Below are positions 3,401 to 63,785 of a DNA stretch of 64,000 nt, in pieces. The stretch lies in NCBI GenBank assembly GCA_002269645.1, contig NIVC01000069.1, positions 248,001 through 312,000 of the forward strand, given 5' to 3'. The notes under the pieces were generated by a model. The model worked only from the letters and a program-made list of their open reading frames with translations. It was not told where the DNA came from and ran no database searches. The DNA is from Macrostomum lignano (taxonomy: Eukaryota). The translations under genes and the position numbers were made by a program. Positions within the stretch are counted from its first letter, which is position 1. Every line of letters begins with the position of its first letter.

Positions 3401-4548
3401 TAAACTTAATATGGTTAATATAACTAACAGCACTATAACAATAGGGCTGCAAAAATTCTGTGAAGTATGTTGTGTACCATTCTCTATGCATTTTCAATTC
3501 TATGTAAGAAACACCTGTGAACTGCCTGCTTTAAGTTTATTAAACATTTTTGCTATGGAGTGCTTTTGGGATGCTTTACCTTTAATTACATGTCTTTAAA
3601 AATTTTTAATTAGGTATAATTTATCTAAAGTATTTAGAAGCCTAAAATTTTGGAATAGACTGTAAAGAGTATTTTATAATAATGAAAAGAGTATCAAGAA
3701 AATTTGTTTCCACAATAGTCCCTCGGGATTGAACATATTTTCATATTGAATTTATGGCTTGTCATATTTTGAGTAGATACAAACTTCTATCTTTTGTGAT
3801 CTTTGAGTGGAGTGGAAAGTTATTCCCAAATAGAATCATTTCATCGACAAAACATTTATAATTTAGATCTCATGGTGATAATTATTTGTATTTATTCGGA
3901 TCGAATGACTGAAGTGATGAAATTGAAAACTTAATCGCGTTCATTTTGCAGGAAGCGAATCCAAGTTTGTCTATGTACATCACTTTTCACAAGTACTTGA
4001 TACTTTTGCACACGTTTTAATGTACTGGATGAAGCATTTATTGTATAAATTGCTTGGAACGACTAGACTTAGAAAGTGAACACTGGGAGTGAAGCCTGAA
4101 ATCTCTTCTGTCAGACAAGACTTGTCAAATTTGTGGGGGCGGCAGGGTTAGCTAAGGCAGGAATGAAGGCCTGTGTACATTCATATCATCACGCCCTCTA
4201 GTGTGAGTGCCAAGTGCGTGGGCAGCCTGCAGGCCGCCCTCAGGCTCAACCCCTTCAACTTCAACCCCCATTAGTCAGACTGCCGCCCACCTCTGCAGCC
4301 AACCAGAGAGCAGCCAATTCCGCTGTCTCCTGATCAGCTGATTCTAGTCGGCGTTGCCCCAGCTCTACATCACCCTATTAAGTAGTTCCCGGCGCAACTT
4401 TATCTGTTTATATCTTCTAAACCAAACATCCGATCGGAATAAAAATCAATACACTTCCTCATCATACATTAAATTACATGCCTGTAAAATTTGTCAATGT
4501 ACAGAAATAAAGGTCAATTTTTGTTAAAGAATAACGTCTGTAAAGCAA

Positions 4549-4971: not shown

Positions 4972-6419
4972 AGTCGGTCAGTCTAAGGGATTGTAGCCTC
5001 TAGGCTACAATCCCTTATAAATATAAATATTAAAAATAGTATTTATGAAAAAATAAATATTTATAAACATAGGGCCTAAACAAAAAATAGTATATAGAAA
5101 GATTGTGGAAATTTTTATTTTTAGATAGTCTTGTACTTTTAACATTAATTGTTTGTTGTCATGTTAATTGTTAGTTGTGTTTTTATGGTTTTTATGGTGT
5201 TTTTAATAAGGTCTTTATTTTATCATTATCTCATTTTAAACTCATAATGCTAACCTCATATTTAATACCCCTAAATGACATTTGATTTTGTCACTAATGC
5301 TGAAATTCCAAAAGACAAATTAAGTTTTATTACTTCATAATCCAGATCTTATTTAGCTTATGTCAGATTAAAATTTCAGCTTTTCTTAGATTTATTTCAA
5401 ATTTAGTGCAAAGGAGTTAAAAGAACTTAAAAAGTACATTCACTATAGTGTAAAAACTGAAAAAGGAAAACTTTAAATTAAAAAAGCTTTTATGCAAACA
5501 AAAGATACATGAAGATATGATGTTAATAACATTGCTAATTAACTAATTAAATACATTTTAGTCTAGTTTTTGTTTTAGTTTTCTTTACCAAAACTTTTTA
5601 AAAAACAATTAGCATATAATCTTTTACAAATATTCAAAATAAAATTACACAAACCATGCAACATATTTTTGTAGCTTGCCTGAAAACAAAGTAAAAATCA
5701 CTAATTTGTTATCATTTTAAAAAATATATAAATGTCTAATATTTTCCACAGTTTTAAATGCTAGGCCTATCTGTTTTGCTATTCACCCTTGGTTTGCCAC
5801 AATTGACACTAGCAAGATTAGTTTAATTTCTTGGCAATTATCCATGTTTGTGTGCAAGCTTACATTTTAAGACATAACAAATAGATAGTATAAAATATAA
5901 AATGTATATAGCACTGGGCCTATATTTGAAATAGAGATATTTATACTACTAACTCTATATATAATAATTTATAACTAGCAGTTAAACCAAGCATGCTTTT
6001 CTATTTGATTTTATTCTTCATAATATATTAAGATATTCGTATAGTTCTTAATTCAAATTGATACCCAGCATTTCTAGCATAAATTATTTTATGTAGCCTA
6101 AGTTTAAAACTATAATTTCTTATGTTTTTGAAGTTTTGGTATATTTAATGAATATTTTTTCTAAGCCTCATATTTATTATCCACTTTTCATGTAAAACAT
6201 TAAGATGTCAATAATTTTATAATTATTCAGATTTTTTAGATTCCAATGTTTCTTTAAATTGTCAAAATTAAGTAGGCCCAAACTTAAAAACATGGAGTCA
6301 GCAAAAAACCTCAAAGCATAACAATGCAAAGTATAGGATATAGATACCAGGTACTAGTATTTTATTTGATTTTGACAACAACAACAAAATATGAAGTTCT
6401 GTGTGTAAGGTCACATACA

Positions 6420-6830: not shown

Positions 6831-8734
6831 TAAACTTAATATGGTTAATATAACTAACAGCACTATAACAATAGGGCTGCAAAAATTCTGTGAAGTATGT
6901 TGTGTACCATTCTCTATGCATTTTCAATTCTATGTAAGAAACACCTGTGAACTGCCTGCTTTAAGTTTATTAAACATTTTTGCTATGGAGTGCTTTTGGG
7001 ATGCTTTACCTTTAATTACATGTCTTTAAAAATTTTTAATTAGGTATAATTTATCTAAAGTATTTAGAAGCCTAAAATTTTGGAATAGACTGTAAAGAGT
7101 ATTTTATAATAATGAAAAGAGTATCAAGAAAATTTGTTTCCACAATAGTCCCTCGGGATTGAACATATTTTCATATTGAATTTATGGCTTGTCATATTTT
7201 GAGTAGATACAAACTTCTATCTTTTGTGATCTTTGAGTGGAGTGGAAAGTTATTCCCAAATAGAATCATTTCATCGACAAAACATTTATAATTTAGATCT
7301 CATGGTGATAATTATTTGTATTTATTCGGATCGAATGACTGAAGTGATGAAATTGAAAACTTAATCGCGTTCATTTTGCAGGAAGCGAATCCAAGTTTGT
7401 CTATGTACATCACTTTTCACAAGTACTTGATACTTTTGCACACGTTTTAATGTACTGGATGAAGCATTTATTGTATAAATTGCTTGGAACGACTAGACTT
7501 AGAAAGTGAACACTGGGAGTGAAGCCTGAAATCTCTTCTGTCAGACAAGACTTGTCAAATTTGTGGGGGCGGCAGGGTTAGCTAAGGCAGGAATGAAGGC
7601 CTGTGTACATTCATATCGTCACGCCCTCTAGTGTGAGTGCCAAGTGCGTGGGCAGCCTGCAGGCCGCCCTCAGGCTCAACCCCTTCAACTTCAACCCCCA
7701 TTAGTCAGACTGCCGCCCACCTCTGCAGCCAACCAGAGAGCAGCCAATTCCGCTGTCTCCTGATCAGCTGATTCTAGTCGGCGTTGCCCCAGCTCTACAT
7801 CACCCTATTAAGTAGTTCCCGGCGCAACTTTATCTGTTTATATCTTCTAAACCAAACATCCGATCGGAATAAAAATCAATACACTTCCTCATCATACATT
7901 AAATTACATGCCTGTAAAATTTGTCAATGTACAGAAATAAAGGTCAATTTTTGTTAAAGAATAACGTCTGTAAAGCAATCTTATATACTAAATCTGAAAA
8001 TGTTTGTAACTTTGTTTATAAGTTTCGCATCTCCTCTTGAACCACTTGGTAGATTTTCGTCAAATTTGTTTCATTCGATGTGGAATTCTATTGGGACCAT
8101 GTGGTCTAATTTTCATTTTGATGTCGTAGTGTGAAGCCTCTCAAATTGGAGAAATACTGTATTTCGCCTATCTAATTAGTGTATTTTTCTCGCAGTCAGA
8201 GTTAAATTTTCAATTTTATATCTATGGTGGTCCGTGAAGTTGACTACGCGGCAGCAGCATCAGCAGCAGCAGCAGCGGCTCGAGTCTAAATAAAGTCTTT
8301 CAATATATAAAGCTAATTATATAGTGTATTTTTCTCGCATTGATTTTATAACCTTGAAGTTCTTTAAGGTGAGTTCAACCGGTGAGTTCAACGGTCAGTC
8401 TGTTCAACTTCGATTCATTCGTATTCGTGCTGGATTGGAGTGATTTGTCAACCGGTCGACCTGTCTGATCTTCTGTTTGCTGTTCGATTATTTGTCGGCC
8501 TGAACCGGTCGACCGGTCTCAACAATTTCATGTGAATGTGTCTCTTAGTTTTTGATACCTGGGCGCGGGTGTGCTGTCGCTCATGCCGAAGAGGAAGCGA
8601 AAGAGTGAGTTAGTAGAGTCGGGAAGCAAAATTGCGTCGTCGGCAGGAAACAGCGGAGGAGCGTAATTCGCGGCTTGAGAAACAACTAGAGTATAGTCTA
8701 ATACTTTACTCTATTTTGTTTCTAACCATTTTAG

Positions 8735-9491
8735 GTTGGCGAAGGTTCGATACCGAGTGATTCAGACGCCAATATCGTGCTACCACCCGAAATCGTTTTG
8801 CCTGGTGACGCTACTGTTGTTGATTTGATCCGGTTTGTATACCCAACGTTCGCTGGGATCGAAAACAGGGAGAAGTTTTTTGAGAGCCGCGTCATTTTAG
8901 CTCCACTAAACGACTCCGTTGATAAAATTAACGATGCATGTTTAGATTTATTTCCAGGCGTTGATCGCGAATATAGATCAATTGACAGTGTCGAGGATGA
9001 GGATGACTTGACGCACTATCCACCTGAAGTGCTGAATAGTATGGACGCACCTGGATTGCCAAAGCATCGGCTTCGTCTCAAATGCGGGATGCCTGTAGTT
9101 CTACTACGAAACTTAAACCCACCACGACTGTGCAACGGAACACGATTAATCATTAAGGAATTGCGAAACAATATCTTACAATGTCAAATTGCTGCTGGTC
9201 AATTCAAAGGCGAAACAGTTTTGTTGCCGCGCGTACCATTGATACCAAGTAATTTGGATCTACCTGTTAAGTTCAGAAGGCTACAATTTCCTCTACGACC
9301 CTGTTTCTGCATGACTATTCATAAAGCACAAGGCCAATCCCTTGACGTAGTTGGAATTGACCTTGCAGGTAGCTGTTTTGCGCATGGACAGCTCTACACT
9401 GCACTTTCCAGAGCAAAAAAATGTTTGTAATGTTCGAGTTCGAATGTGCGGCGAAAGAACCAAAAATATCGTTTACCCAGAAGTTTTTTGA
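8735..9491 (+). pseudogene. Helitron RepHel Pif1-like helicase, C-terminal exon only
   Basis: After acceptor ttttag|: VGEG...LAPLNDSVDKIN...LRNLNPPRLCNGTRL...RRLQFPLRPCFCMTIHKAQGQSLDVVGIDL...FAHGQLYTALSR. The terminal TKNIVYPEVF* is out of frame by one extra A in an A7 run at ~9415-9421. Confidence 0.9.
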
Positions 9492-11502: not shown

Positions 11503-13190
11503 TCATATACCTAAAGTTGAGTTTGTTTGTCTGTGCGCGTCACGTTTCCGGGCGAACGGCTGGTCCGCCGTCCGTGGGACCTGTACCATTCGATGGCACA
11601 TCTTTCTGGGACAATGTGGCATGTTTCAAATCGCCTTAATGTTGACAGGGAGCTTGGCAAATGTGGGAAAAACTGTATTTTTCCTATCTCCTTAGTGCAT
11701 TCTAGCAACCAAAGTCATAAAAGCAAGTTGCAGTTAAAAGCAACAAAAAACGAGACCCCAGCAACCAAAGCACGAGACCGTAGCAACCAAAATCAAAAAT
11801 ACCCTAGCAACCAAAATACGAGACCCTAGCAACCAATTCGAAGACCCTAGCAACCAATTCGAAGACCCTAGCAACCAATCCGAGGACCCTAGCAACCAAT
11901 TCAAGGACCCTAGCAACCAATCCGAGGACCCTAGCAACCAATCCGAGGACCCTAGCAACCAATTCGAGGACCCTAGCAACCAATCCGAGGACCCTAGCAA
12001 CCAATTCGAAGACCCTAGCAACCAATTCGAGGACCCTAGCAACCAATCCGAGGACCATAGCAACCAATCCGAGGACCCTAGCAACCAATTCGAGGACCCT
12101 AGCAACCAATTCGAAGACCCTAGCAACCAATCCGAGGACCCTAGCAACCAATTCGAGGACCCTAGCAACCAATTCGAAGACCCTAGCAACCAATTCGAGG
12201 ACCCTAGCAACCAATTCAAGGACCCTAGCAACCAATCCGAGGACCCTAGCAACCAATTCGAGGACCCTAGCAACCAATCCGAGGACCCTAGCAACCAATT
12301 CGAGGACCCTAGCAACCAATCCGAGGACCCTAGCAACCAATTCGAGGACCCTAGCAACCAATTCGAGGACCCTAGCAACCAATTCGAAGACCCTAGCAAC
12401 CAATCCGAGGACCCTAGCAACCAATCCGAGGACCCTAGCAACCAATTCGAAGACCCTAGCAACCAATTCGAGGACCCTAGCAACCAATCCGAGGACCCTA
12501 GCAACCAATTCGAGGACCCTAGCAACCAATTCGAGGACCCTAGCAACCAATTCGAGGACCCTAGCAACCAATTCAAGGACCCTAGCAACCAATCCGAGGA
12601 CCCTAGCAACCAATTCGAAGACCCTAGCAACCAATCCGAAGACCCTAGCAACCAATTCGAGGACCCTAGCAACCAATTCGAGGACCATAGCAACCAATTC
12701 GAGGACCCTAGCAACCAATTCGAAAACCCTAGCAACCAATTCGAGGACCTTAGCAACCAATTCGAAGACCCTAGCAACCAATTCGAGGACCCTAGCAACC
12801 AATTCGAGGACCCTAGCAACCAATCCGAGGACCCTAGCAACCAATCGAGGACCCTAGCAACCAATTCGAAGACCCTAGCAACCAATTCGAGGACCCTAGC
12901 AACCAATTCGAAGACCCTAGCAACCAATTCGAGGACCCTAACAACCAATCCGAAGACCCTAGCAACCAATTCGAGGACCCTAGCAACCAATTCGAGGACC
13001 CTAGCAACCAATTCGAGGACCCTAGCAACCAATTCGAAGACCCTAGCAACCAATTCGAGGACCCTAGCAACCAATCCGAGGACCCTAGCAACCCGATTTC
13101 TTTGGTTTCTTTGGCTATACATAAAAATTTTTTGCAAATAAGTACAAGATGTGAAAGTCACACTACACAGCATTTCAGTATTATTTTAAG
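11503..13190 (+). mobile_element. Second Helitron-like element (5' end plus internal minisatellite); 3' end not identified
   Basis: Starts TCATATACCTAAAGTTGAGTTTGTTTGTCTGTGCGCGTCACGTTTCCGGGCGAACGGCTGGTCCG, a typical Helitron 5' pattern, immediately after the first element's CTAG. Right boundary is arbitrary. Confidence 0.55.
11802..13093. repeat. 21-bp minisatellite (ccctagcaaccaattcgagga), ~60 copies
   Basis: Read directly; degenerate precursor units from ~11700; explains the LVARVLE and WLLGSSN ORFs. Confidence 0.95.
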
Positions 13191-13798
13191 TATACTTTTT
13201 TGCGATTGAATTCGTCCAAACTGCAAAACCTTTCGTCCACTAACGCTTTCTTAATGGGAGCTAAATTTAGATTATACCATAGACAACTGTGTTCACGCAA
13301 AACGGTTCATCCAGTTTGTAAAACATTTCTTCTTCTTCGTCCATCTGCTGATGGTAACTTCTCGATCAATGCGCCCGGTTTGAACGTAGGTGTCGACAAT
13401 CGTTTTGGCTGTCTTTCTCTTGATCCCAAGGATATCGGCCAGTTGTTTCCAATCGCGGCCTTCTTCAACAGCCAAGGCTAATCGCCTGCGGTCTTCGTTT
13501 GACACTGGATGGTAGGGGCCTCGGTTCATCTTCGACTGTTTTGCCGGGTTCAGAATGGAAGATATGCGTTGCTGTAGCTGTAGTGGTAGCAAAAGCGAAC
13601 TGTCAATTGGGTGTTAACTATGGTAGGAACAGTACACTCGGTCTCTAGTCTAGGGGATGAAATGTTTTACAAACTGGATGAGCCGTTTTGCGTGAACACA
13701 GTTGTCTATGGTATGATCTAAATTTAGCTCCCACTAAGAAAGCATTTGTGGACGAAAGGTTTTGCAGTTTGGACGAATTCAATCGCAAAAAAAGTATA
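13191..13798 (-). mobile_element. Tc1/IS630-like deletion derivative with ~140-bp TIRs
   Basis: TATACTTTTTTGCG...CGCAAAAAAAGTATA ends; ~13191-13330 inverted at ~13660-13798; minus ORF MNRGPYHPVSNEDRRRLALAVEEGRDWKQLADILGIKRKTAKTIV..TGR is an N-terminal transposase-type HTH. Confidence 0.8.
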
Positions 13799-15018: not shown

Positions 15019-15575
15019 ACCTGTATAACTTTCGCCGACACATTTTCAGACAGATCTTTCGACACTTTTTACAACACTTAAAATGTCGGAAAAAGTGTCG
15101 TAACAGTTAACTTTTGCCGACACATTTTCAGACAGATCTTCCGACACTTTACGACACTTAAAATGTCGCAAAAAGTGTCGAAAAAAGTGTCGTAACAGTT
15201 GACATTCACCGACACATATTTTCCGACACTTAAATTAATGCTGCAAAAAGTGTCTGAAAATTAAGTGTCGTACAGTTAAATTCTGCCGACACATCTTCCG
15301 ACACTTAAAATGTCGCTTCTTAGAGCTAGGTGATGTACATGTAGCTCGTACTATTCATGTAAGCTTACATGTATGTTTGTTAAGTACGCACTACACAGCA
15401 GCCTGCAGTGCACGTTTCAATTGTGTTGCGCGTCATTTAATTACATTAATCGATATACATATGTACATGTAAAAGTTGGCGTTTTATTTAGACTACAAAC
15501 AGTATGTATTGTAAATGAAAGGCATGATATTTTCAGTGTTAAATATATTTGCAGCCAAATTAATACAAAATGCTA
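15019..15575 (+). repeat. Left long TIR with modular CCGACAC/GTGTCG subrepeats
   Basis: Near-perfect reverse complement of 30462-31015. Confidence 0.9.
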
Positions 15576-30461: not shown

Positions 30462-31015
30462 TAGCATTTTGTATTAATTTGACTGCAAATTAACACTGAA
30501 AATATCATGCCTTTCATTTACAATACATACTGTTTGTAGTCAAAATAAAACGCCAACTTTTACATGTACATATGTATATCGATTAATGTAATTAAATGAC
30601 GCGCAACACAATTGAAACGTGCACTGCAGGCTGCTGTGTAGTGCGTACTTAACAAACATACATGTAAGCTTACATGAATAGTACGAGCTACATGTACATC
30701 ACCTAGCTCTAAGAAGCGACATTTTAAGTGTCGGAAGATGTGTCGGCAGAATTTAACTGTACGACACTTAATTTTCAGACACTTTTTGCAGCATTAATTT
30801 AAGTGTCGGAAAATATGTGTCGGTGAATGTCAACTGTTACGACACTTTTTTCGACACTTTTTGCGACATTTTAAGTGTCGTAAAAAGTGTCGGAAGATCT
30901 GTCTGAAAATGTGTCGGCGAAAGTTAACTGTTACGACACTTTTTCCGACATTTTAAGTGTTGTAAAAAGTGTCGGAAGATCTGTCTGAAAATGTGTCGGC
31001 GAAAGTTATACAGGT
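30462..31015 (-). repeat. Right long TIR of the 16-kb element
   Basis: Near-perfect reverse complement of 15019-15575. Confidence 0.9.
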
Positions 31016-32430
31016 GCTTTTAATTGGTACGAATTTTATTTAATTTATTTTATAAAATAAATTTCAGATCTGTCGGATTAATTGGCAACTCCCAGAAGGG
31101 AGACCCGTATCACGGATCGGAGAAGCGGTCCCGGCGAGAAATTGCCAATTGCAACGAGCGGCGTCGAATGCAAAGCATCAATTCTGGCTTCGAGTCGCTC
31201 AAGACTCTGTTGCCAACGGAAGAGGCGAAAAGTTAAGCAAGGTAAGTTTGAGGAAAATCCAGTGTATTAACGGTGTCCTAGTGTGTGTCTGGGTAATCCC
31301 TATCCCCGGCCAGCTGTTTAAACTTAGGACTTAGCCAGTGTGGCACTAATGTGCAATAGGCTAGGATTATTTTAGGGTCTGTCAGACTGCCAAGTTCCCT
31401 AAAGCACTGAAATGTACGCAATGCGTGCACTATACTACTTAGATACTTCCTCAGTAGAAATAGTAGGTTTTTGTACGCGCATTTTCTAGCTGCTCGTATG
31501 TGCACCCTAAAAAATAGTTGGAAAACCGGCCTGATTCTTAAAATAGCAAAGAATTGAGTGCCGATTTTTAACAAATCCGACTTGCTTCTATTTTAGTAAG
31601 TCACTCGTGTAAAAAAATTGTCGCACACAATTTCAACGCATTTCAGGCAGCCATTCTACAACTAACGTCCAAGTACATTCAACATCTTGTTGGCGAAAAT
31701 CGACGAATGCGCGACCAGTTGTCGCAGATGCAGCAGCAGCAGCAGCAGCCTCACATCCAGCAGGCCTCCGAGCAACTCCAGACACTGGCTAGACCCTATC
31801 GGGGCTGGCCGCCAGTGCTGGACTGTCAGGCGTGGGGTGGAAGGTCCGCTGGCCACGGACACGAAAGCTGGAATTCCGGCCCCTCTGCTGGGGTTGACCC
31901 TGGTGGACCTGGTGGCAGGCTCACCGACATGCCCTCTGCACACTCACGCGGCGACGCGGTGGTGCAAGGCCCCTGTCCTATGGTGAGCGGGACATTGACG
32001 GCTGGCTGTGCCATGTTGCAGTCAGACCGTTCCCGTAGGCCCATTGACCAGGTGACCCAGCGGGGCCGGCATCAACAACAACAACAACAACAGCAGCAGC
32101 AGCAGCAGCAACATCAGCAGCAACCGCCGCAGCAGCCTCGTAACACCGATGTGCTTCTAGCCGCATCTGATGTTGCGCTAAGAAAGCGTAAACTGCCCGC
32201 CGCTCCTGACGACAGCGACGGCGGAGGAGGAGGAGGAGGAGGCGGCGGCGGAGTCTACATTGGCTACTTCCAGCAGCAGGGCAATCACACTATTATTCGG
32301 GCGCAGCCTCAGCAGCAGCAACAGCAGCAGCAGCATCCAACCTTCCAACTAGCTGTCAAGCCTGACTATGAGCAATTCGTTATCGAACCGCCTGTTCACC
32401 AACTGCAGCAACAGCAGCAGCAACAGCATC

Positions 32431-35400
32431 GGGGCTTGGAGACGACGTCCACGACGTGCCCCTGGACCGACCGAGAAATCGCGTCGGAGTACCGACTAAC
32501 GGTCTCCCCTACCACCGAACCTGCGAAGAGATGCACACGGTGCTCAGGCTGCGAGGCGGCGACTCCACCATCGCTCCAGCCAACCACCGCAAGACACGCC
32601 GTAGCGCCCGGAAACGTCGAGACGGACGGCCCAGTGCAGAGCCGGATCAAGAGCTCCGAGCACTTCAGTTCAACGCCAACGGACTGAAAGCACGCCTCAC
32701 AGAGCTGACCCATTGGCTCGCCAAGAACCGCCCGGCCCTCGTCCTCATCCAAGAGACAAAGCTCGTGCCCGACGAGGAGTTCACCCCACCGACCGACTAC
32801 TGCATCGCAGCGCGAGTCGACGGACTCCCCTACGAGGAAACGGAGAGCGCTCGAGACGACAACACGGACACCAACAACGCCGGCACCCAACAACAGCAAC
32901 AGCAACGACCTGTGGCCCGCACCGCGACCAGGCGAGTGACGAGACCACGGTGCCGCCTCCGCTTCCCAGACGATCGGGCCAGATGGTGCCGCGGATGCCG
33001 CAGTGGACGTACCGCCTGTACCGAACGCGACGCCCCGTGGCCAGGCACAGATGCAGGCCCCGAGCAAACCGAGGCCGGAGAGCAAGAGGAGACGGGCGCG
33101 CCACTAGCCGGGAAAAAACCAAAAAGGCAAAAAAAACCAACCGGCAGGGGCGGCGTCCTGATCTTGACTCGCTCGGACGTGAGGTACAGCACACTACCCA
33201 CGATTCCACAGGACCAAGGCAAACTCGATGCGGCCGCCATCGTCCTTCACATCACCGGCAAGTCCCCCATCACCGTCGTCAATATTTACGCCCCGCCAAC
33301 CAGTGCCCAGCGCCAGGACACTTGGACTCCGAACTTCGACACTCTGCCCGTGGGCCCCAACTCCATCATCTGTGGCGACTTCAACGGCCACGGCTGCTGG
33401 GACAAGTGGACCGATGAAGACGCTAGGGGACACCGTATCGAACACTGGATTGCGATTAACGGCCTCCACGTCTGTAACGGAACCAGCCATACCAGGAGCA
33501 GCCCGAGCAGCGGATCCCGGAGCTCACCCGATCTGACGCTGGCAAAGGGCTTTCCGACCGCGATCATCCCGGCGGGTTGGAGAACCGAAAAGGATATGGG
33601 CAGCGATCACCTCCCTATCACCTTCCCGCTGGCAATGGCGAGGCGCGAACTCAAGCACGGTATCACTCGCTGGAGCTTCGCCAAGGCCGACTGGCCCGCC
33701 TTCAGACAACACCTAGCCGACATCCAAGGACCCCAGGACTGGGGCGACGTGGACTCTGAACACGCGACCCTCTGCGCCGACATCATCGAGGCCGCCACTC
33801 AGACGATCCCCAGAGGCAGCCCCAAAATCAACCGCTGCCCCTTCTGGACCCCAGACTGTGAAATCACCCGACAAGCCTGCATCAGAGCAAGGGCCACGGC
33901 CGAGTCCGACCCGACCCCAGAGAACCTCGCGGCTTACAACGCAGCTCGACATGCCGCCAGCAATACCATCCGCAAAGAGCGCAGAGGCTTCCTGGAAGAC
34001 CGCGCCAGCGAAATGACGGTCGACAGCAACCTCTTCCGGCTCCTGCGCGCAGCCAGAGGAGATACGCCAGTCCCGCGCGGCAAAGTCGATATCACCCGGA
34101 AATCGGTCGACGGTGTCGAGCTCCGACCGGCGCGCACCGACAAAGAAAAGGCAGACACTTTCTGCCAAATCTACGCCGCTGCCGCCAGGGTCCCCGCCGA
34201 AAGGAGGACTACAAGATCCGCTACGAGGCAAGACGCGCCAGGAGATGACCAGTCCAGCCGCCGGTACCCTTCACTCTCCTGGAGCTCAGATCAGCTATTC
34301 GACAACTCAAATCCGGCAAAAGCGCCGGGGAAGACGGCGTTACCAACGAGATGCTCAAACGCCTCCCACCGGCCACCGACCAACGCCTCCTGGACCTCAT
34401 CAACAGCACGTGGATACAACAGCGCTGCCCCTGAAGCTGGAGGTCGGCAATCATCATCCCAATTGTAAAAAAAGGAAAAGACGCCACCCTCCCAACATCC
34501 TACCGACCGGTGGCCCTTACGAGCTGCATCGCCAAATGCGCGGAGAGGATGGTGCTCCAAAGACTCAACCGCCAGCTCGAAACCAACGGCTCCCTGTCCC
34601 CGGCACAAGCTGGATTCCGCAGAGGCCGCAGCACCGAGGAGCAGCTCGCCAGGGTCTGTCAGGACATCTTCGACGGCCTGGAGCGCTCTCCACCGCACAG
34701 GAGCATCCTCGCGTGCATGGACTTCAAAGGAGCCTACGAAACGGTCTGGAAGGAAGGCCTCGCTGTGAAGATGACTCGAGCAAAGATCGACCAGAACACC
34801 ATCGGCTGGACGGAAGCCTTCCTTTCCGACCGACGCGCAAGAGTCCGCTTCGGGCGCACCCTGAGTCGCCAGCGCGTCTTCCGAGAGGGACTTCCGCAAG
34901 GCTCGGTTCTGGCGCCAACTCTCTGGAACATCTACGTGAATGACCTAGAAGAGGCAGTCACGACAGCAGCGCCGGACTGCGGTATCAGCCTCTACGCCGA
35001 TGATTTGGCTGTCCTCAGCACCCAGCCCTCACTGGCGAGCTGCGGAGCCAGGATACAACCGGCACTCGACGCTATAGCCAACTGGACCAAGGAGTGGAAA
35101 ATCACCCTGAGTACCAGTAAGTGCAACTACTCAACTTTCACGCTCGCCCCCAACGAGGTGAACGGCAAGCTCCGGGTCCCGCTCGAGCTAGCCGGCGAGC
35201 CACTTCAGTTTGAAGAAAACCCGACCTTCCTGGGCCTCATCCTGGACTGCCAGCTGAACTTCGCGAAGCACGCAGCCAAAGTCTGCCGCCGCATGAGCCG
35301 ACGCCGACGCGCTCTCACCGACCTCGCGAACCGCACGATAGGAGCCACCCAGGAGGTGCTCCGGACGGCCTACCAGGCAACCATCCGCGCCGTGGCCGAA

Positions 35401-36799
35401 TACGGATGCGGAGTCTGGGGAGCCAGCGCGGCACCAAGTACCAAACTGCTCATCGAACAGCAACAGAACAACTGCGCAAGAATCATCACCGGATGTATGC
35501 TCCCAACTCGAACCACGGAGCTGCTTCGGACGGCCAACCTCCCCCCCTTTGGCCACACCATCCTGGAACGCGCCGCCTGCCTTCGAGAACGGGTGCTGCG
35601 CCTCCCGGAGGACGTCCCAGCACACCGGACTGCGGCCAGAGACACCACCAGCAGACTACGAAATCGCGCCTACGAGAGCGCCCGCCGGCAAGAAGAGGCA
35701 AATTTTAACGCGCTACTAGACAACGACTACAAGCGCCCTTTCCGCGGCTGCTGGCGGCGAATCGCGAGAGAAATCACCGATCCCAGCGGCCTCGAGGACC
35801 GGCCCAGAGAGCCGTTCCCACCACCGCCGCCCGACCTGACACACCTCGCGCTGAAGCAGTACAGCCCGACTTTCGACCTCACCCTCGCCGACGGCTGCGG
35901 CAGAGCAGTCCCGACGAGTGTCCGCCGCGACAGGGCGATGTCAGCTCTTGAGCAGCTGACACCCTGCGACATCGACGCGTGGACGGACGGCAGCGTCAAG
36001 GAGGGCATCAACGACGCAGGGGCGCCGCGGTGGTCTGTACCCGCCTCTGGTGCCAAAAGATCACCGCCCCGGCCGGCCGGATCGCATGCAGCTTCCAGGC
36101 GGAGATGGTCGCGATCAGCGCCGCCCTCGACTACATTATTCAACTCCCGCCAGAGCACGGCCTTACAGTGCGGATCCTCAGCGACTCCAAATCTGCAATC
36201 ACGGCCCTCCACAGCGGCCCCAGCAGGCAGGACACCACCGCCGGAAGCCGCTGCTGGGAGGTACTGGCCCACATGTCGCGCCCGTGCGACTTCGTCTGGG
36301 TCCCGGCCCACTGCGACGTCCCGGGCAACGAACAAGCAGACCGCTGCGCCAACGAAGCTAGACGCGGCCAACACCAGGACGAACCCATTACGCTGCAGGC
36401 CGCCAAGGCCGCCATACGACGCGCGCGGTCCGCTCGCGACCAGGAACTGCTTGGACGGCCCTGGCAACGACCACCACGACACCTGACCAGGAAAGAAACG
36501 GTGGCGATAATTCAACTCAGAGCCGGGTGCTCCACCCTGGCCGGGGCCACACGTCACCGGGTCGGCCTGACTGAGAACGCCAGCTGTCCCGACTGCGGGG
36601 CGCCTGACACGGAGGAGCATATTATCCTGGAATGCCCACGAGGCGACGCCCTTCGGGCGAGCACAGAGGACGAGAGGGACATCCGTGACGACCCGGAGCG
36701 CCTTCTCGCCCTCCTTCGCAGGTTGGGGCGCCTCTGAGCGCCCTCCCCCCAGCTGCCAACGGCAGCGTTGCGGGGCGGTGGAAGAAAAGAAGAAGAAGA
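32431..36799 (+). mobile_element. Full-length Ingi-type (I group) LINE, copy A: APE-RT-RNase H-CCHC, decayed
   Basis: TSD AGCAACAGCATC (32419-32430, 36800-36811); GGGG 5' end; (GAA)n tail; QFNANG, QETKL, GDFNGH, SDHLPI, GLPQGSVL, LYADD, WTDGS, WVPAH, CPDC..H...C. At least two frameshifts and a TGA near 34430. Confidence 0.9.
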
Positions 36800-36921
36800 A
36801 GCAACAGCATCAGCAGCTTCCCCTGCCTACAAAGCCTAAGCGACTCGAGCACCTAATGATGGCCATCGAACGCATCGAAGGCCAATCAAATCTGCAGCAG
36901 CAGCAGCAGCAAGAGCAGAAT

Positions 36922-39900
36922 GGGGACAAGAAGGCGCCCTCCTAGAGAACATCATGGGGTCCCCGGAAGTCCAAGGAGAGACCGAACGGCCAAACCTTGG
37001 AACTAACTGCCTTCCCAAACAGCGATGCCCCGCAGGGGGCGAGAGACTAAAACGCGGCAGTGGAGATATCGATAACGACGTCAGAAATACCGATAACATC
37101 GACACAGTCCTTCGACTCCGCGGAGGGTGCGGTACAGCCCCCCGCAGCAAGCGGAGTGGTAGCGGGAAGAACGGCGAGGACCACAGCCCAGAGCTCATCC
37201 TGCAATTCAATTGCAACGGCCTTCGGGCCCGTTCCACCGAGCTGGCCAAGTGGCTCCAGACTAATCGACCTGCAGCTATTCTGCTTCAAGAGACAAAACT
37301 CCGGACGGGACAAGTTTTTAACCCGCCGGACGGATACTGCGTGGCCGCTAGGTGCGACGGCCTCCCCAAGGACGCAGCCCAGCGGGGACAGGAGCCAGAT
37401 GAGAGACCATCCGAAAGCAGCGCTCCCTCGGACACATGTCCGACGCCTTGGACAAGGTGCGGAGGACGTCGCCTTACTAGACCACGATGCCGGATGCGCT
37501 GGCCGGAGGACCGCACCGAATGGTGCCCTGGATGCAAATCGGGCCGCACCGGTTGCGTTCGCAGGAACGAGCCATGGCCAACACCGAGTCTGAATCAGGC
37601 GGATATCACAGTGATAGCAACAGAAGACGCAGGAACACACGCACCCGCACCTACGTCAACGGCTGATGCAGCACAATTACAACACAAGGGGCTAGCCTGG
37701 CACCTCCTAAGAAAACAGGCTGGCAGTGCTGCAAGTGCGGCAACCAAATTAAAGGACGGCAGTATTCGGTCCGATGCAACGGCTGCAACGACTGGTGTCA
37801 CCTATCGTGTAGCGGCCTGGGCCGTAGCAACAGGTGGACAAGTGCTTTCAAAGCGGAAATGTGCAACTCCTGTACACCTGTCCAACCGCCGCCATCACAG
37901 CCACCGGCAGAACGGAGCCCATCACCGTCACCACCGACACCACCATTACCGATACCGATACCAACAAATAAGACTCGGAAAAACCCGATCAATCACGCGG
38001 CCCGCGGCGGGGCGATGATTCTCACCCGCTCGGACATTGCCGTTGACAACATACCGACGCCAGGAGATAAGGAACGCGGCATGCTGGACGTCGCCGCAGC
38101 CGCCATCCACCTCAAAGACTCAAAGCCAATCACGCTCGTTTCTGTCTACGCACCACCTATCAGCGACCAGAGAGGCGAGACCTGGCACCCCCCGCTCAAT
38201 CTCATTCCGGACGCCCAGCGCGTCATCATAGGGGGCGACTTTAACGCTCACGGGATTTGGGACAGCCACCAAGAGGAAGATGACAGAGGCCGCAGGGTGG
38301 AAGCTTGGGCTAGCGCAAGGAACCTGCGACTCGCTAACGGCGAGCGACACACCCGCACCAACCCGGCGACAGGCGCTTTATCCTCGCCGGATATCACCTG
38401 GACCAGCACCAATCTGCTGAGCAGCGTCGCGGACAGCTGGACAACTCAGAGTGACATGGGCTCGGATCATCTTCCCATCACGTTCCAGCTTTGCTCCGCT
38501 CACAAGCGCCCGACCAGGCAGAGGCGCCCTAGGACTGCAAAGTGGAGCTACCGAAAGGCGGACTGGAGTGGTTTTAAACAGGAGCTCGCCACCATCGATG
38601 CCGAAAGGGAACAATACCCGACGGAAGGTGTCGAGGCCGAGCACCTCCACGCCCTTATCTGCGACGACATCCTGAAGGCGGCGAGCCATAACATCCCTAA
38701 AGGGGCTCTCCCGAGGACCAAACCCTTCTGGAGCGAGGAGTGCGAGAAGGCCACCCAGGCCTGCAAAGAGGCGCGCCGGACAGCTGAAACTGAACCGTCC
38801 GAACCCAACATTGCAGCCTTCAAAATGGCTAGAAACCGAGTTCGGTCCACCATTCGCAAGGAAAAGGAAAAAGCCTGGAACGAGAAGGCGGCTCAGCTAG
38901 ACGTTAACAGTGACCTCTTCCGCCTGCTGAAGAACATGAGGGGGGACGGGCACACCCCCGCCAGCAGTACATCTATTACCAGGCACCAGACGGGTGGTAC
39001 CGCGCCCAGCAGACCAGCGCGAACTAAACTGGAAAAAGCGAACCTGTTCTGCCAGATGTACAGCGCGGTCTCCAGAGTACCAAAACGCCCAGAAGACAGA
39101 CTGATCAACAAAAAGGCCTATGAAGCGGCCAGTGCCCGCTGTTGCGATGCCGACAATCGCCAGGGAATCTGCCAGCCCTTCAACCCCACGGAGTACCGGA
39201 ACGCCGTCCGAGCCCTGAAATCTGGAAAGGCACCCGGACAGGACGGAGTCAGTAATGATATGTTGAAACACTTACCACCGTCCACTGACAAAAGACTCCT
39301 GGAGCTCATTAACAGGTCATGGATGGGAGGCAAGTGCCCGTGGCAGTGGAGAAAGGCTACCATTATCCCGATTCCCAAGAAAGGGAAGGACGCCAGCAAG
39401 CCGGAATCATATCGCCCAATCGCCCTAACCAGCTGCGTGGCTAAGCTCGCAGAGCGCATGGTCCTCCAGCGTCTCCGTTACGCCCTGGAGGCCTCGGGTC
39501 GGCTGACCGCCAGCCAGGCGGGCTTCCGACGGGGGCGTTCCACTGAGGAACTCATTGCCGACATCTCCCAGGAGATCTTCGACAAGCTCGAGGCCACCCC
39601 GCACATCAGGTCAGTGCTCTGCCTGCTTGATTTTAGCCGCGCTTACGACAGAGTCTGGAGGGCGGCTCTCTACTCGAAGCTGCGAGACTTGGGAGTGCCA
39701 GCCGACGTCATCCGGTGGATCAAGGCCTTCCTGTCAGACCGAAGAGCCCGCGTGCGCGTCGGTGACTGCACCAGCAAAGAACGCATCTTCCGGGAAGGAC
39801 TACCACAGGGGTCGGTGCTCGCCCCCACACTGTGGTTAGTCTACGTCAACGATCTGGCTGATGCGGTGCTAAACGCCGCCGCGGGTGTTTCCATCAAACT

Positions 39901-41754
39901 TTATGCCGATGACAGCGCCCTCCTGACCTCTAACAGGTTTCTGGACACATGTGAAGAGAAGCTGCAACCCGCGCTGAACGCCGTCTCACAGTGGTGCAAG
40001 GAATGGAAAGTGGAGCTCAGCGTGGAAAAGAGCGTGTACGGCACTTTCACGCTGGACGCAAAGGAATCAAACGGCAAAAAGAGACTCAACCTGCTCATCG
40101 ATGACAAGCCAATAGCCTTTGACCCAGCCCCGAACTACCTCGGTGTTCGCCTAGACGGTCAACTCAATTTCGCGCAGCACGCCGCGACAGTCCGCGCCAA
40201 GATGTGCGCCAGACGCCGACCGCTCGCAGCGATGGCCGGCAGGAGCACCGGAGCTGACCTACAAACGATCCGAACAGCCTACATCAGTACCGTCCGCGCT
40301 GTGGCCGAGTACGCCGCAGGTACCTGGCTATGCGGCGCCGCCCCCTCCACCAGACGAGCTATTGAACAGCAGCAGAACGCGTGCGCGAGACTGATTACGG
40401 GATGTATCATGCCGACCAACATCCGCTCAGTCCTACAACTGGCCGGGCTCACACCGCTCTCATTCATCGCGTCCGAGAGGGCGGCACGCCTAAGGGAAAG
40501 AGTCCTCAGACTCGACCCGAGTGTCTCGGCGGGACAAGTAGCCTTGCGGAACACCAGGCCTAGACTGAAAAACCGTACCTACGAAGCTTTGGCACGCGAC
40601 CACGGCCGCACCCACGGAGACGGCGGCGCCGACGACGAAGCACAGCCGAACTCGCTGAACCTCATCGACCCGCGGGACGCCACCCGCCCCTTCCGGAACT
40701 CTTGGAGGAGGGCGGCACTGGAGCTGCCGTCGGTTGCCATGTTGGATTCCCACAAAAGAGGCGACCCGGTAAGCCCCGGCATCCCGCCGTGGGAGTGCGA
40801 CGCACGGGACATTAACATCCGCCTGGACATCTCGGCCCGATGCCGCCGCACGGACCCCCAGGAGTCCCGGAGCGCGGCGGCAACGGAGTTTCTGCAGTCA
40901 CTGCCTGAGGCTGACATCTGCGTGTGGACAGACGGATCGGTGGCGGACGGCACCGGACCCGGCGGCAGCGCCGCTATAACCTGCACGAACTTGGCGAGCC
41001 ATGTGCGCAAGGCCCCGGCCGGAATCATCTGTAGCTCCTTTGACGCAGAAATGATAGCCATCCGCGAAGCACTGGTTTTTATTAAGAACAACTGCAGCCC
41101 GAGCGAAAAGAAGATTCGCCTATGTAGCGACTCTTTATCGTCACTGACAGCACTAGGGGCCGGACCACTAGCCCAGGCGACTAAGACCGGTACGGACTGC
41201 TGGCGCCACATGCTAGACATCAACGAAACGGCCGACATAGAACTAATCTGGGTGCCAGGCCACTGCGGCATCAGCCTTAATGAAGCGGCGGACCGCGCGG
41301 CCGGCATGGCAAGAGGCTTGCCCCAAGAGGAAGTGCCCATCTCCTTCAACGCCGCAAAAGCAGCCATTCGCCGCGATCGCCGGACCCTGGAGAAAGAAAC
41401 CCTGCCGCAACCCTGGCCGGACTTCAAAGCGAGAGACCGGCGGGAGCAAACGGCGGTGTGCCAGCTTCGCGCAGGCATGACGATGCTCTGCGCCGAGATC
41501 CAGCACCGATTCGGTATGATCGATAACCCGCAGTGCCCGGACTGCGGAGAACTCGACGACAGCGCCCATGCGCTACTTCACTGCCACCGGGGAGACGCTC
41601 GACGGATGGCCCTGGTCGGGAACGATCACGAGGAGCTCCTCCGGAACCCGGGAAAATGTCTCTCGCTCCTTCGGAGCATGGGGCGATGGCCCCCGCAAAT
41701 TTCGGCGCCGCCGCGCCGGTAAAGCGAGCGCTGAAGCAGAAGAAGAAGAAGAAG
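36922..41754 (+). mobile_element. Full-length Ingi-type LINE, copy B: APE with PHD insert-RT-RNase H-CCHC, nearly intact
   Basis: TSD AAGAGCAGAAT (36911-36921, 41755-41765); GGGG 5' end; (GAA)n tail; ORF 36954-41722 with one frameshift near 37620-37720. Confidence 0.92.
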
Positions 41755-43659
41755 AAGAGCAGAATCCAAATCAGTCTCAGTCTATTGCTGTTTCCTCTGA
41801 GCACAGGCCCTGCTCTACAGAAGCGGCTCGTTGCCTGTTGCAGCAGCAACCTCAGCCAGCCGTCATGATCAGCCCGTTCACGCCGCAGGACACCAGCCAG
41901 CCTGCTGATCGGCAACAACAACAACAGCAGCAGCCAATTGACGACGAGGACGCAGCTGAGAAGGATTCCAATTTGTCGTTGTCCTCCCAGCGACTTGTCG
42001 TAGTCGATTTGGCAGCGGCGGCTGCTGCAGCTGTAGAATCTTCGCCACACTTGGCCGCTGGCTCGTCTGACCCGGACTCGCCCGGCCAGTGCCGGCCAAG
42101 AGCGATACCGCACAAGTACCTGCACCGACCGCAAGTTGTCCAGGCTAACCGGTCTAATTAAGGTTGCCGGCCCCACCTCCCCCACCTCTGCCATTGATTT
42201 GTTTAACTTTAATCGCTTGTGTTGTTAGTTGGCTTTTTTCAAGAAAAAACAACCTTCAATTATTATTACGGGCATCTATCGCGTGCGTTTATTAGTTCAT
42301 AATAGTAGTAATATTCTACTAGTAACATTTATTTATTGGTCGTTACTAAAAGCCTAGCTTAGTCTGGATACTGGTGCACATGTACAGACTCGCTGGCAGG
42401 CCAACTGTAATTATTTATTATTAAAGTCATTCATTAATGCTTAAAGCCGGTTTTATATTTCAATTCAGATTCTTTCTGACCCCGTCTGTACACATAGTTT
42501 AGAAAAGCCTCTGATCATATATATCCGGTATATATGCTAAGCCGTCAGTTTCTATGGCTAAAAGTGCAGACACCATCAATTAATTAATCATTTAGTTAAT
42601 TGATTTTATCTGATAAATAATTTGTAATTCAAAAATTTGTGTACCACAATTAATACGCCATATATAAATGTAGTCAAACGTTTATTTGCTCAACACGAAA
42701 TCACAGTTTCAATTTGTTGTTATTGTTGTTGCTGTTGTTATGTTGCAGAATTGCTCTTGTCGCTTCAAGTTAATTAAATTTTATAGTTTTTTTGCGTATC
42801 TATGCCAAATATAAACATAAGCATTGAGGGGTTACAGTTAATTTGTTAGCAGACAACAATTCTGCCTCATATAGTAATTATTTATTAAACAATTCATGTA
42901 GTCCCTTGTTAATCCCATTGTTCCTAATTAAACTTTTAATCTCCCCCGTGTGTGCTTGTGCTCATGCCGTTGCTATCTGCAATCACTATCGTATTTCTCC
43001 GTGCATATGTAATAAAACATTAAATAGTGCGTATTGTCAACTACTGTAATCTTTATAGTCCTACTAATAGTAATATTGCTTTTTCTTGTGTTTTTGTGTT
43101 TAAAAATGCCATGCCTGCTCGCGTTGAACCTGTGTGCGTCAGATATAATTAGTAAAAATCAATTGTATATCTATATTATTGTAATTTGATATACTATTAT
43201 TATATTGAAACTATTCGCAAATATATGGCTTTCTGACACTAATAGTAATAAATATATTATTTAATTTATTTAATTTATTTTATAATTTAGGCAGAATCAA
43301 TTGCGCAAGATAATGAAACCGGCGCATTCATCATACTACTGACTTCAAGTAGGTAAAAAATTCTAAATCTAATTAAAGATTTTTTCGATACATATCGTCG
43401 TTAATTGTACCAATGATAAAATGCCGCTTAGAACACCGAAATGAATAAGAAGAAGCCAAGCCGCGTTAAATTGTGCATCTATAACAGTTAGTTGTAATAA
43501 CAGTGTATATTTATACTAAACTCTACTGTGAAGTCAGCAATGCTTTCTACCGACATGTTGCGCACGATTGTCAAGGTGCTTGAATGTTCTGAAGTAAAAC
43601 GAAGGACTAAAGTACATCAATTTTGAATACTAATTTATATTATTATTTCCTGCCCTAAT

Positions 43660-43858: not shown

Positions 43859-47362
<3,504 letters not shown>

Positions 47363-47918: not shown

Positions 47919-63785
<15,867 letters not shown>

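What the first reader, a model, noticed from the sequence alone, without database searches (positions are those of the whole stretch)
32531..37130. Two diverged Ingi LINE proteins carry a ubiquitin C-terminus mimic (TVLRLRGG) just before the endonuclease
Seen: copy A encodes MHTVLRLRGG-D (VLRLRGG at 32540-32560) and copy B encodes IDTVLRLRGG-C (37107-37127), about 20-30 residues before the APE start LQFN[A/C]NGL. The flanking leaders are unalignable, yet all eight TVLRLRGG codons differ synonymously (acg gtg ctc agg ctg cga ggc ggc vs aca gtc ctt cga ctc cgc gga ggg), which points to protein-level selection. Established: ubiquitin ends LHLVLRLRGG and deubiquitinases cleave after GG; trypanosome ingi/L1Tc-type elements have a 2A-like processing peptide at a comparable N-terminal position. 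Inference: these LINEs use host DUBs to cut off a leader and set the N-terminus of the ORF protein. The exposed residues (Asp, Cys) are both Arg/N-degron substrates, so cleavage might also limit protein lifetime. I cannot check whether the motif is already described.
Basis: partly seen in the sequence, partly recalled or inferred. Interest (0 to 1): 0.85.

Follow-up and report, generated by a model that had tools for sequence, protein, structure and literature searches.

The report
Ubiquitin-tail motif heading flatworm-type LINE proteins
Two diverged jumping genes (LINE retrotransposons) begin their single protein with a short, unstructured leader that ends in the last seven residues of ubiquitin. 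This sits where related elements carry a self-separating 2A peptide, so it is probably a new way of cutting off the leader, though cleavage is untested.

Summary
Copy A (32430-36799) encodes MHTVLRLRGG|D and copy B (36922-41754) encodes IDTVLRLRGG|C, 34 and 24 residues before the endonuclease. All motif codons differ synonymously. Chance expects about 7e-4 VLRLRGG hits in the window; two are seen.

Two further copies elsewhere carry it at the same place: LHRVLRLRGG|D in a Macrostomum lignano contig, and LLHVMRLRGG|G in an SRA assembly. TVLRLRGG is one of only eight exact runs of 7 or more residues that A and B share; the others I could place are endonuclease and reverse-transcriptase motifs.

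The leader must be translated. No Met lies between GG and the endonuclease, and the B-family ATG, 33 nt from the 5' end, is conserved. The leader body is unalignable, has no Pfam ubiquitin hit, and AlphaFold2 gives no confident fold. It is a tail only.

Of 93 database relatives with an N-terminal region, 40 carry a canonical 2A peptide there and one carries the ubiquitin tail. Of 25 metagenomic relatives, 13 have 2A and none has the tail.

Best reading: a lineage-specific replacement of 2A by a site cut after GG by host deubiquitinases. Cleavage is unproven, and tail-only peptides are poor deubiquitinase substrates. I found no prior description. New variant of a known kind; interest 0.68.

The parts
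32430..36799 (+). Copy A: non-LTR retrotransposon, 4370 bp, degenerate (at least 2 frameshifts), probably 5'-truncated, ending in a (GAA)n tail.
   Evidence: Pfam finds endonuclease, RT and RNase H. An 11-bp target-site duplication flanks it and the host ORF is restored when it is removed. ORFs.
32419..32429 (+). Target-site duplication of copy A (AGCAACAGCAT). The second copy is at 36800-36810.
32531..32560 (+). Copy A leader end, MHTVLRLRGG. VLRLRGG is at 32540-32560 and the putative cut is after 32560. The frame is open upstream to the element's 5' end.
32561..32662 (+). Copy A basic linker (DSTIAPANHRKTRRSARKRRDGR...) between GG and the endonuclease. It contains no Met.
32663..33625 (+). 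Copy A endonuclease (LQFNANGL to DMGSDHLPITF), with a Cys knuckle inserted at 32951-33019.
34513..35235 (+). Copy A reverse transcriptase domain. RNase H is at about 36009-36359 and the C-terminal CCHC motif at 36585-36635.
36922..41754 (+). Copy B: non-LTR retrotransposon, 4833 bp, full length, single ORF, one frameshift at about 37675-37715, ending in a (GAA)n tail.
   Evidence: The 5' end is confirmed by the same terminus in L003.
36911..36921 (+). Target-site duplication of copy B (AAGAGCAGAAT). The second copy is at 41755-41765.
36954..37127 (+). Copy B leader, 58 codons from the conserved ATG (33 nt from the 5' end) to GG. TVLRLRGG is at 37104-37127 and the putative cut is after 37127.
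   Evidence: No confident fold predicted.
37128..37199 (+). Copy B linker (CGTAPRSKRSGSGKNGEDHSPELI) between GG and the endonuclease. It contains no Met.
37200..38485 (+). Copy B endonuclease, split by an inserted Cys knuckle (37488-37556) and a PHD-type finger (37727-37873). The endonuclease resumes at 38006.
39371..40045 (+). Copy B reverse transcriptase domain. RNase H is at about 40913-41305, the CCHC motif at 41534-41584 and the stop codon at 41720-41722.
31602..32429 (+). Host exon upstream of the insertions: GC-rich, polyQ-rich, with a bHLH-like stretch (AAILQLTSKYIQHL). It continues at 36811-36921 and 41766-42161.
   Evidence: Removing A, B and one duplication copy each restores one uninterrupted reading frame that runs to a stop codon.

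Best explanation
Copies A and B are two diverged families of a single-ORF non-LTR retrotransposon with the order endonuclease (APE), reverse transcriptase, RNase H, CCHC.

Shown:
- The ORF begins with a short, fast-evolving leader for which no fold is predicted: 58-59 residues in the B family and up to 88 in the A-family relative.
- The only constrained part of the leader is its end, [L/M/I]-[H/D]-x-V-L-R-L-R-G-G. In the A-family relative L002 this matches ubiquitin residues 67-76 at 9 of 10 positions.
- The motif is kept by protein-level selection.
- The leader has to be translated, because no other start codon exists before the endonuclease.
- The motif occupies the position where a large share of related elements carry a 2A (StopGo) peptide.

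Inferred:
- The tail was taken from a ubiquitin coding sequence and has replaced 2A as the device that separates the leader from the enzyme.
- Host ubiquitin-specific cysteine proteases, which normally process ubiquitin precursors, cut after Gly-Gly. This releases an endonuclease-RT protein that starts with D, C or G followed by a basic, possibly nuclear-targeting, stretch.
- The leader may itself be a by-product of 5'-terminal DNA or RNA signals that happen to be translated. Only its first roughly 50 nt are conserved at the DNA level in the B family.
- Cleavage may be partial, because no ubiquitin body is present.
For: - Motif and synonymous codon divergence in four independent copies. In every pair, 5-7 of the 7 VLRLRGG codons differ synonymously, and the only replacement is L to M in L003.
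- Chance expectation 7e-4 against 2 observed. The motif is one of only 8 exact runs of 7 or more residues shared by A and B, which are 45-55% identical.
- No Met between GG and the endonuclease in A, B or L002. B and L003 share the 5' terminus GGGGACA... and an ATG at +33.
- The leader body is unalignable.
- Positional equivalence with 2A. 40 of 93 database relatives with at least 30 residues before the endonuclease have NPGP there, as do 13 of 25 metagenomic relatives. Odon et al. 2013 place 2A 40-80 residues from the N-terminus of single-ORF non-LTR elements, including Ingi (PMC3708506).
- The residue after GG is never Pro. From my own knowledge, deubiquitinases do not cut Ub-Pro.
- Residues that are surface-exposed on ubiquitin's last strand (H68, V70) tend to be kept, while buried L69 is replaced by T, T or R (interpretation from my own knowledge of ubiquitin structure).
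Against: - No cleavage data exist.
- There is no ubiquitin fold upstream of the tail. Pfam finds no ubiquitin domain. tblastn similarity beyond the tail is weak (13/37 identities in B, of which 7 are the tail). AlphaFold2 gives pLDDT 57 and 42 with no confident fold, though from a 4-sequence alignment and a single sequence, which are poor inputs.
- Deubiquitinases use an exosite on the ubiquitin body, and LRGG tetrapeptides are 'very poorly hydrolyzed' (PMC7477763).
- Only four copies were available, all of them damaged.
- The elements encode no protease of their own.
Confidence: 0.45

Rival explanations
1. The tail works uncleaved as a docking peptide. It sits in the active-site cleft of a deubiquitinase or another ubiquitin-tail-binding enzyme, recruiting or inhibiting it, for example to protect the ORF protein from degradation.
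For: The motif is strictly conserved but lacks the ubiquitin body needed for efficient hydrolysis. A poorly hydrolysed tail could act as a pseudo-substrate.
Against: I know of no precedent in retrotransposons. It does not explain why the motif sits exactly where relatives carry a separating 2A peptide. The free leader body carries no other conserved feature.
Confidence: 0.15
2. The motif is part of a basic nuclear-localisation or nucleic-acid-binding arm (RLR plus the downstream K/R cluster). Its identity to ubiquitin's tail is ancestry without any ubiquitin-related function.
For: A K/R-rich stretch follows GG in all copies: RKTRRSARKRR, PRSKRSGSGK, RQTRSSKKRGRGHR, NAKRRQ.
Against: Basic arms tolerate substitution. 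Here V, L, R, L, R, G, G are each fixed while the adjoining basic stretch varies freely. The invariant Gly-Gly and the conserved hydrophobic positions are not expected for a nuclear-localisation signal.
Confidence: 0.1
3. The leader is a cryptic, highly diverged ubiquitin-like (beta-grasp) domain, so this is an ordinary ubiquitin-fusion protein processed like polyubiquitin or UBA52.
For: The copy B leader aligns without gaps to ubiquitin residues 40-76 (13/37 identities, E 0.006 in a 64-kb search). L003 has GETITIE, resembling ubiquitin's GKTITLE.
Against: Outside the tail, identity in B is 6/30. Leaders are 58-88 residues, mutually unalignable and rich in polar or low-complexity sequence. Pfam finds no ubiquitin domain. 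AlphaFold2 finds no confident fold.
Confidence: 0.07
4. Cleavage after LRGG is done by an LXGG-specific papain-like protease supplied in trans by another element or virus in the host, not by host deubiquitinases.
For: LXGG is the classic site of coronavirus and arterivirus papain-like proteases, which accept peptides without a ubiquitin body (papers listed; my own knowledge).
Against: No protease domain is present in these elements. No candidate partner was seen in the window. Dependence on a second parasite is unparsimonious.
Confidence: 0.05
5. The motif is a neutral relic of a captured ubiquitin fragment (5' transduction) with no present function.
For: The motif matches ubiquitin at up to 9 of 10 positions (in L002), which argues for descent from a real ubiquitin gene.
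Against: Synonymous sites are near saturation while the seven residues are unchanged across families whose proteins are only about 50% identical, and the rest of the leader has diverged beyond alignment.
Confidence: 0.03

Closest known systems
2A / StopGo peptides in the N-terminal region of single-ORF APE-type non-LTR retrotransposons (L1Tc, Ingi, CR1, L2, Rex1, Crack; Heras 2006, Odon 2013, PMC3708506)
   Same: Same class of element and same position: a few tens of residues from the N-terminus, shortly before the endonuclease or a PHD finger. Same pattern of a free-evolving upstream peptide ending in a short invariant motif. Relatives of these very elements carry canonical 2A.
   Different: The motif is VLRLRGG, not D(V/I)ExNPGP. 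2A acts on the ribosome without a protease, whereas this would need a host cysteine protease acting after or during translation.
Cellular ubiquitin precursors (polyubiquitin, UBA52 and RPS27A fusions) processed by deubiquitinases
   Same: Identical P7-P1 residues (VLRLRGG), and the downstream protein would be released by a cut after Gly76. The residue after GG is not Pro.
   Different: Cellular precursors carry the whole 76-residue beta-grasp domain, which deubiquitinases need for efficient catalysis (PMC7477763). Here only the last 7-10 residues are recognisable.
Cytopathic pestivirus (BVDV) genomes with host ubiquitin inserted upstream of NS3 (my own knowledge, not checked here)
   Same: A selfish genetic element uses a host-derived ubiquitin sequence and host deubiquitinases to create a new N-terminus in its polyprotein.
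   Different: Those insertions are complete or near-complete ubiquitin monomers in an RNA virus, arise sporadically, and are not a conserved family trait.
LXGG cleavage sites of coronavirus and arterivirus papain-like proteases
   Same: A bare LRGG-type site in an unstructured linker is cut without a ubiquitin body.
   Different: Those viruses encode the protease themselves. These elements have no protease domain.

Membership tests
APE-type non-LTR retrotransposon (LINE) | Endonuclease (Exo_endo_phos) and reverse transcriptase (RVT_1) in one element | tested here: met
   Pfam hits in both copies, plus RNase H.
APE-type non-LTR retrotransposon (LINE) | Insertion flanked by a target-site duplication, simple-repeat or A-rich 3' tail, no LTRs | tested here: met
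   Perfect 11-bp duplications and (GAA)n tails. The host ORF is restored on removal.
Ingi clade (I group) | Placement of the RT domain within the Ingi clade by phylogeny against reference elements | not testable with these tools
   No Repbase or Dfam reference set was available.
Ingi clade (I group) | Single ORF with endonuclease-RT-RNase H and no ORF1 | tested here: met
   Copy B's ATG is 33 nt from the 5' end, leaving no room for an ORF1. Domains.
2A / StopGo peptide | C-terminal D(V/I)ExNPGP motif in the leader | tested here: not met
   No NPGP lies upstream of the endonuclease in A, B or L002. It is present in 40 of 93 and 13 of 25 relatives.
Ubiquitin / ubiquitin-like domain fusion | C-terminal LRLRGG tail directly followed by the fused protein | tested here: met
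   VLRLRGG in A, B and L002; VMRLRGG in L003.
Ubiquitin / ubiquitin-like domain fusion | Beta-grasp ubiquitin fold (about 70 residues, Pfam PF00240) preceding the tail | tested here: not met
   No ubiquitin Pfam hit at E<=0.01. Only weak similarity beyond the tail. AlphaFold2 pLDDT 57 and 42 with no confident fold, although the inputs were a 4-sequence alignment and a single sequence.
Viral LXGG site with a cis-encoded papain-like protease | Protease domain encoded by the same element | tested here: not met
   Only endonuclease, RT and RNase H were found by Pfam. The remaining segments are the linker, zinc fingers and CCHC.
Deubiquitinase substrate | Hydrolysis of the peptide bond after Gly-Gly by a deubiquitinase | not testable with these tools
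   Needs biochemistry. The literature says tail-only peptides are poor substrates.

The most novel reading that the evidence does not exclude
A lineage of flatworm LINEs swapped the ribosomal 2A device for a fold-less ubiquitin tail, a minimal portable deubiquitinase site that frees the endonuclease-RT from whatever is translated upstream. Because all four known copies sit just after CAG/CAA runs, and at least three of these are within host polyQ coding sequence, the tail may also let the element free itself from host-protein fusions when it lands in frame in polyQ exons. The new N-terminus (D, C or G) might additionally tune protein half-life.
Probability: 0.3. Interest if true: 0.85.

Novelty: new variant of a known kind. 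Interest (0 to 1): 0.68.

Why it matters
- **Two solutions to one problem.** If the tail is a cleavage site, retrotransposons have solved leader removal in two unrelated ways within one clade: ribosomal skipping and hijacking the host's ubiquitin-processing enzymes. That would support the view that leader removal itself is the selected function of N-terminal 2A peptides, which is still debated.
- **A short deubiquitinase site.** It would provide a natural example of a 7-10-residue ubiquitin tail accepted by cellular deubiquitinases without the ubiquitin body. That is of interest for enzymology and as a short protease-based alternative to 2A in expression constructs.
- **Control of protein lifetime.** It would link LINE protein production to the ubiquitin system and possibly to N-degron control.
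- **If cleavage does not occur.** A ubiquitin tail conserved as strictly as the catalytic motifs would still need an explanation.

Tried and rejected
- **Full ubiquitin upstream of the motif.** tblastn of ubiquitin against the window and Pfam recover only the tail. The ungapped 37-residue alignment in B is 6/30 outside the tail, so I rejected it as evidence of a domain.
- **In-frame fusion with the host ORF.** In A and B the host polyQ frame differs from the element frame. L002 and L003 lie in the host polyQ frame, but in L003 a stop codon precedes the junction, so only L002 gives an uninterrupted host-element ORF. This is not clearly more than chance, so fusion is not required.
- **Word-indexed protein searches.** One with the full A N-terminus and one with a leader alignment were swamped by polyQ or ubiquitin words and returned 4 and 0 hits. 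The exhaustive phmmer search and a polyQ-free, motif-free profile found P0010 and P0155.
- **Identifying the window's source.** Exact-protein look-ups found nothing on record. The P0005 look-up also failed.
- **Shared frameshift between the Cys knuckle and the PHD finger.** It occurs in B, L002 and L003, so I considered programmed frameshifting. The directions differ (-1 versus +1) and L002 and L003 carry further shifts, so I treat these as decay or assembly errors.
- **Literature.** Searches for retrotransposon or transposable with LRLRGG, RLRGG or ubiquitin fusion found no prior description.


Full report
**1. What is there**

The GC-rich block at 31.6-42.2 kb lies in an otherwise AT-rich window. 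It is a host coding exon interrupted by two non-LTR retrotransposons in the same orientation.

Pfam finds an endonuclease/exonuclease/phosphatase domain, a reverse transcriptase and an RNase H in each element. A C-terminal CCHC motif follows.

Copy A is 32430-36799. It is flanked by a perfect 11-bp duplication (AGCAACAGCAT), ends in a (GAA)n tail, and is broken into three reading frames.

Copy B is 36922-41754. It is flanked by AAGAGCAGAAT, also ends in a (GAA)n tail, and has a single frame break near 37675-37715.

Deleting both elements and one duplication copy each restores one uninterrupted reading frame that runs to a stop codon. The restored protein is polyQ-rich and contains a bHLH-like stretch. 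This fixes the element boundaries independently of the finding.

**2.

A reads MHTVLRLRGG|D (ATG at 32531). B reads IDTVLRLRGG|C (GG at 37122-37127). All eight TVLRLRGG codons differ and all differences are synonymous.

The endonuclease motif LQFN[A/C]NGL begins 34 residues after GG in A and 24 residues after GG in B.

A and B are only 45-55% identical as proteins and align as DNA only within the RT. They share eight exact runs of 7 or more residues. TVLRLRGG is one. Of the others, DMGSDHLPITF lies in the endonuclease and several (QAGFRRGRSTEE, FREGLPQGSVLAPTLW) lie in the RT region.

From the window's residue frequencies, 7e-4 chance VLRLRGG hits are expected in six frames and two are seen.

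**3. Independent copies elsewhere**

An exhaustive phmmer search with the A N-terminus found P0010. It is encoded on contig NIVC01002647.1 of assembly GCA_002269645.1. Papers that cite this accession deal with Macrostomum lignano.

That A-family copy (locus L002) reads NLHRVLRLRGG|DSN, with a third set of codons.

A polyQ-free, motif-free profile then found P0155, on a Logan assembly of run SRR31628394 (locus L003). It belongs to the B family. It has the same 5' terminus (GGGGACA...) and the same ATG 33 nt from the end. It reads LLHVMRLRGG|G.

Across all six pairs of copies, 5-7 of the 7 motif codons differ synonymously. The only amino-acid change is L to M in L003.

In A, B and L002 the pattern is [L/M/I]-[H/D]-x-V-L-R-L-R-G-G; L003 is shifted by one residue upstream of the Val. 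L002 matches ubiquitin 67-76 (LHLVLRLRGG) at nine of ten positions, which argues for descent from a real ubiquitin sequence rather than convergence.

**4. The leader is translated, and it is not ubiquitin**

No Met lies between GG and the endonuclease in A, B or L002. In L003 that segment is deleted. Translation must therefore begin upstream of GG.

In the B family the start codon and the first roughly 50 nt are conserved, while the rest of the leader is not.

Leaders are 58 residues (B), 59 (L003) and 88 (L002). Copy A appears 5'-truncated.

Apart from the tail, the leaders are unalignable. Pfam reports no ubiquitin domain. tblastn similarity to ubiquitin beyond the tail is 6/30 in B.

AlphaFold2 gives pLDDT 57 with no secondary structure for the B leader, and pLDDT 42 for P0155. 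The inputs were a 4-sequence alignment and a single sequence, so this is weak negative evidence. Taken together, the evidence points to a tail without a fold.

**5. Comparative context**

Of 113 database relatives whose endonuclease N-terminus could be located, 93 have at least 30 residues before it. Among these 93:
- 40 carry a canonical 2A motif (for example AGDIETNPGP);
- 29 carry a PHD finger;
- only P0010 carries the ubiquitin tail.

Of 25 relatives recovered from metagenome contigs, 13 have 2A upstream and none has the tail.

This matches Odon et al. 2013. They found 2A 40-80 residues from the N-terminus of mostly single-ORF non-LTR elements of the Ingi, CR1, L2, Rex1 and Crack clades, sometimes followed by a PHD domain. 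That paper never mentions ubiquitin (PMC3708506).

The ubiquitin tail therefore sits in the slot that 2A occupies in the wider group, and it is restricted to the lineage represented here.

**6. Mechanism**

The most economical reading is that the tail is a proteolytic release site that replaced 2A. The leader is made, then a ubiquitin-specific cysteine protease cuts after Gly-Gly. That yields an enzyme starting with D, C or G followed by a basic stretch.

Shown: conservation, position, obligatory translation of the leader, and absence of an element-encoded protease.

Inferred: cleavage, and the identity of the protease.

The main objection is kinetic. Deubiquitinases bind the ubiquitin body through an exosite, and LRGG tetrapeptides are 'very poorly hydrolyzed' (PMC7477763). 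Cleavage could therefore be slow or partial, or depend on a protease that tolerates bare tails.

The rivals are an uncleaved docking motif, a basic nuclear-localisation or nucleic-acid arm, a cryptic beta-grasp domain, a protease supplied in trans, and a neutral relic. Each is listed with its test in the rival explanations. The neutral relic is essentially excluded by the codon pattern.

The N-degron suggestion rests on four residues (D, C, D, G) and remains speculation.

**7. Novelty**

Searches of the paper library for retrotransposon or transposable with LRLRGG, RLRGG or ubiquitin fusion found no description. Subscription journals and Repbase annotations are not covered, so priority cannot be excluded.

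I class it as a new variant of a known kind, namely N-terminal leader-separation modules of single-ORF LINEs. The functional claim is still to be tested.

**8. Side observations**

All four 5' junctions lie directly after CAG/CAA runs. In the window and in L002 these runs are demonstrably host polyQ coding sequence.

Both datable nick sites read CAGCAGC^A(A)G. This suggests a preference for CAG repeats, and hence polyQ exons.

The endonuclease is interrupted by a Cys knuckle, and in B, L002 and L003 also by a PHD finger.

Noticed in passing
32419-32429 / 36800-36810 and 36911-36921 / 41755-41765; L002 1880-1912; L003 60-96: Both elements are inserted about 110 bp apart, in the same orientation, in one host polyQ-rich exon. 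All four known copies (A, B, L002, L003) sit immediately after CAG/CAA runs. The two datable nick sites read CAGCAGC^A(A)G. This suggests a (CAG)n, and hence polyQ-exon, target preference with microhomology to the (GAA)n tail.
   Followed up: partly
32951-33019 (A); 37488-37556 and 37727-37873 (B): A Cys knuckle (C-x12-WC-x2-C-x6-C) is inserted inside the endonuclease domain in A, B, L002 and several more distant relatives seen (P0007, P0009, P0011, P0012). B, L002 and L003 also have a PHD-type finger there, whereas 2A-bearing relatives place the PHD before the endonuclease.
   Followed up: partly
36922-36975 (B) versus L003 97-150; 32445-32470 (A) versus L002 2010-2035: The 5'-terminal DNA is conserved far better than the leader peptide. 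The B family shares GGGGACA..GAACATCATGGGGTCCC, and the A family shares GCGTCCACGACGYGCCCCTGGAC. These may be promoter or RNA signals that are translated as part of the leader.
   Followed up: no
43862-47270: A third non-LTR element on the + strand, with the C-terminal half of the endonuclease, RT and RNase H. It is 5'-truncated, so its leader cannot be examined.
   Followed up: partly
15148-15542 and 30490-30884: A 100% identical inverted repeat of at least 395 nt encloses about 15 kb. The enclosed region has ORFs matching DUF4218 (weakly) and DUF1258. It may be a large DNA transposon with terminal inverted repeats, or an assembly artefact.
   Followed up: no
1567-1866 and 4997-5296: A perfect direct repeat with 3430-bp spacing. 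It is part of a longer duplication, since further matching peptides occur at 3844-3945 and 7274-7375.
   Followed up: no
11696-13200; 53829-59258; 59682-60268; 61669-62519; 62815-63229: Satellite arrays: a 21-bp unit with about 60 or more copies, a 24-bp unit with about 225 copies that is stop-free on both strands and has strong GC skew, 14-bp GGTTTAGGGTGAAG-type arrays, and another 21-bp array.
   Followed up: partly
8777-9430: An ORF with Pif1 2B and UvrD-like helicase C-terminal domains, probably a Helitron-type helicase fragment.
   Followed up: no
L003 430-470 (P0155 residues 105-114): In the B-family copy L003, the Cys knuckle is followed by CTAETNPGP. This resembles the end of a 2A motif, where A and B have ...PWP. 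It is probably coincidence, but it could be a 2A remnant.
   Followed up: no
37675-37715 (B); L002 about 2600-2700; L003 about 600-640: Three copies change reading frame between the Cys knuckle and the PHD finger, in different directions. Decay or long-read indel errors are likelier than programmed frameshifting.
   Followed up: partly
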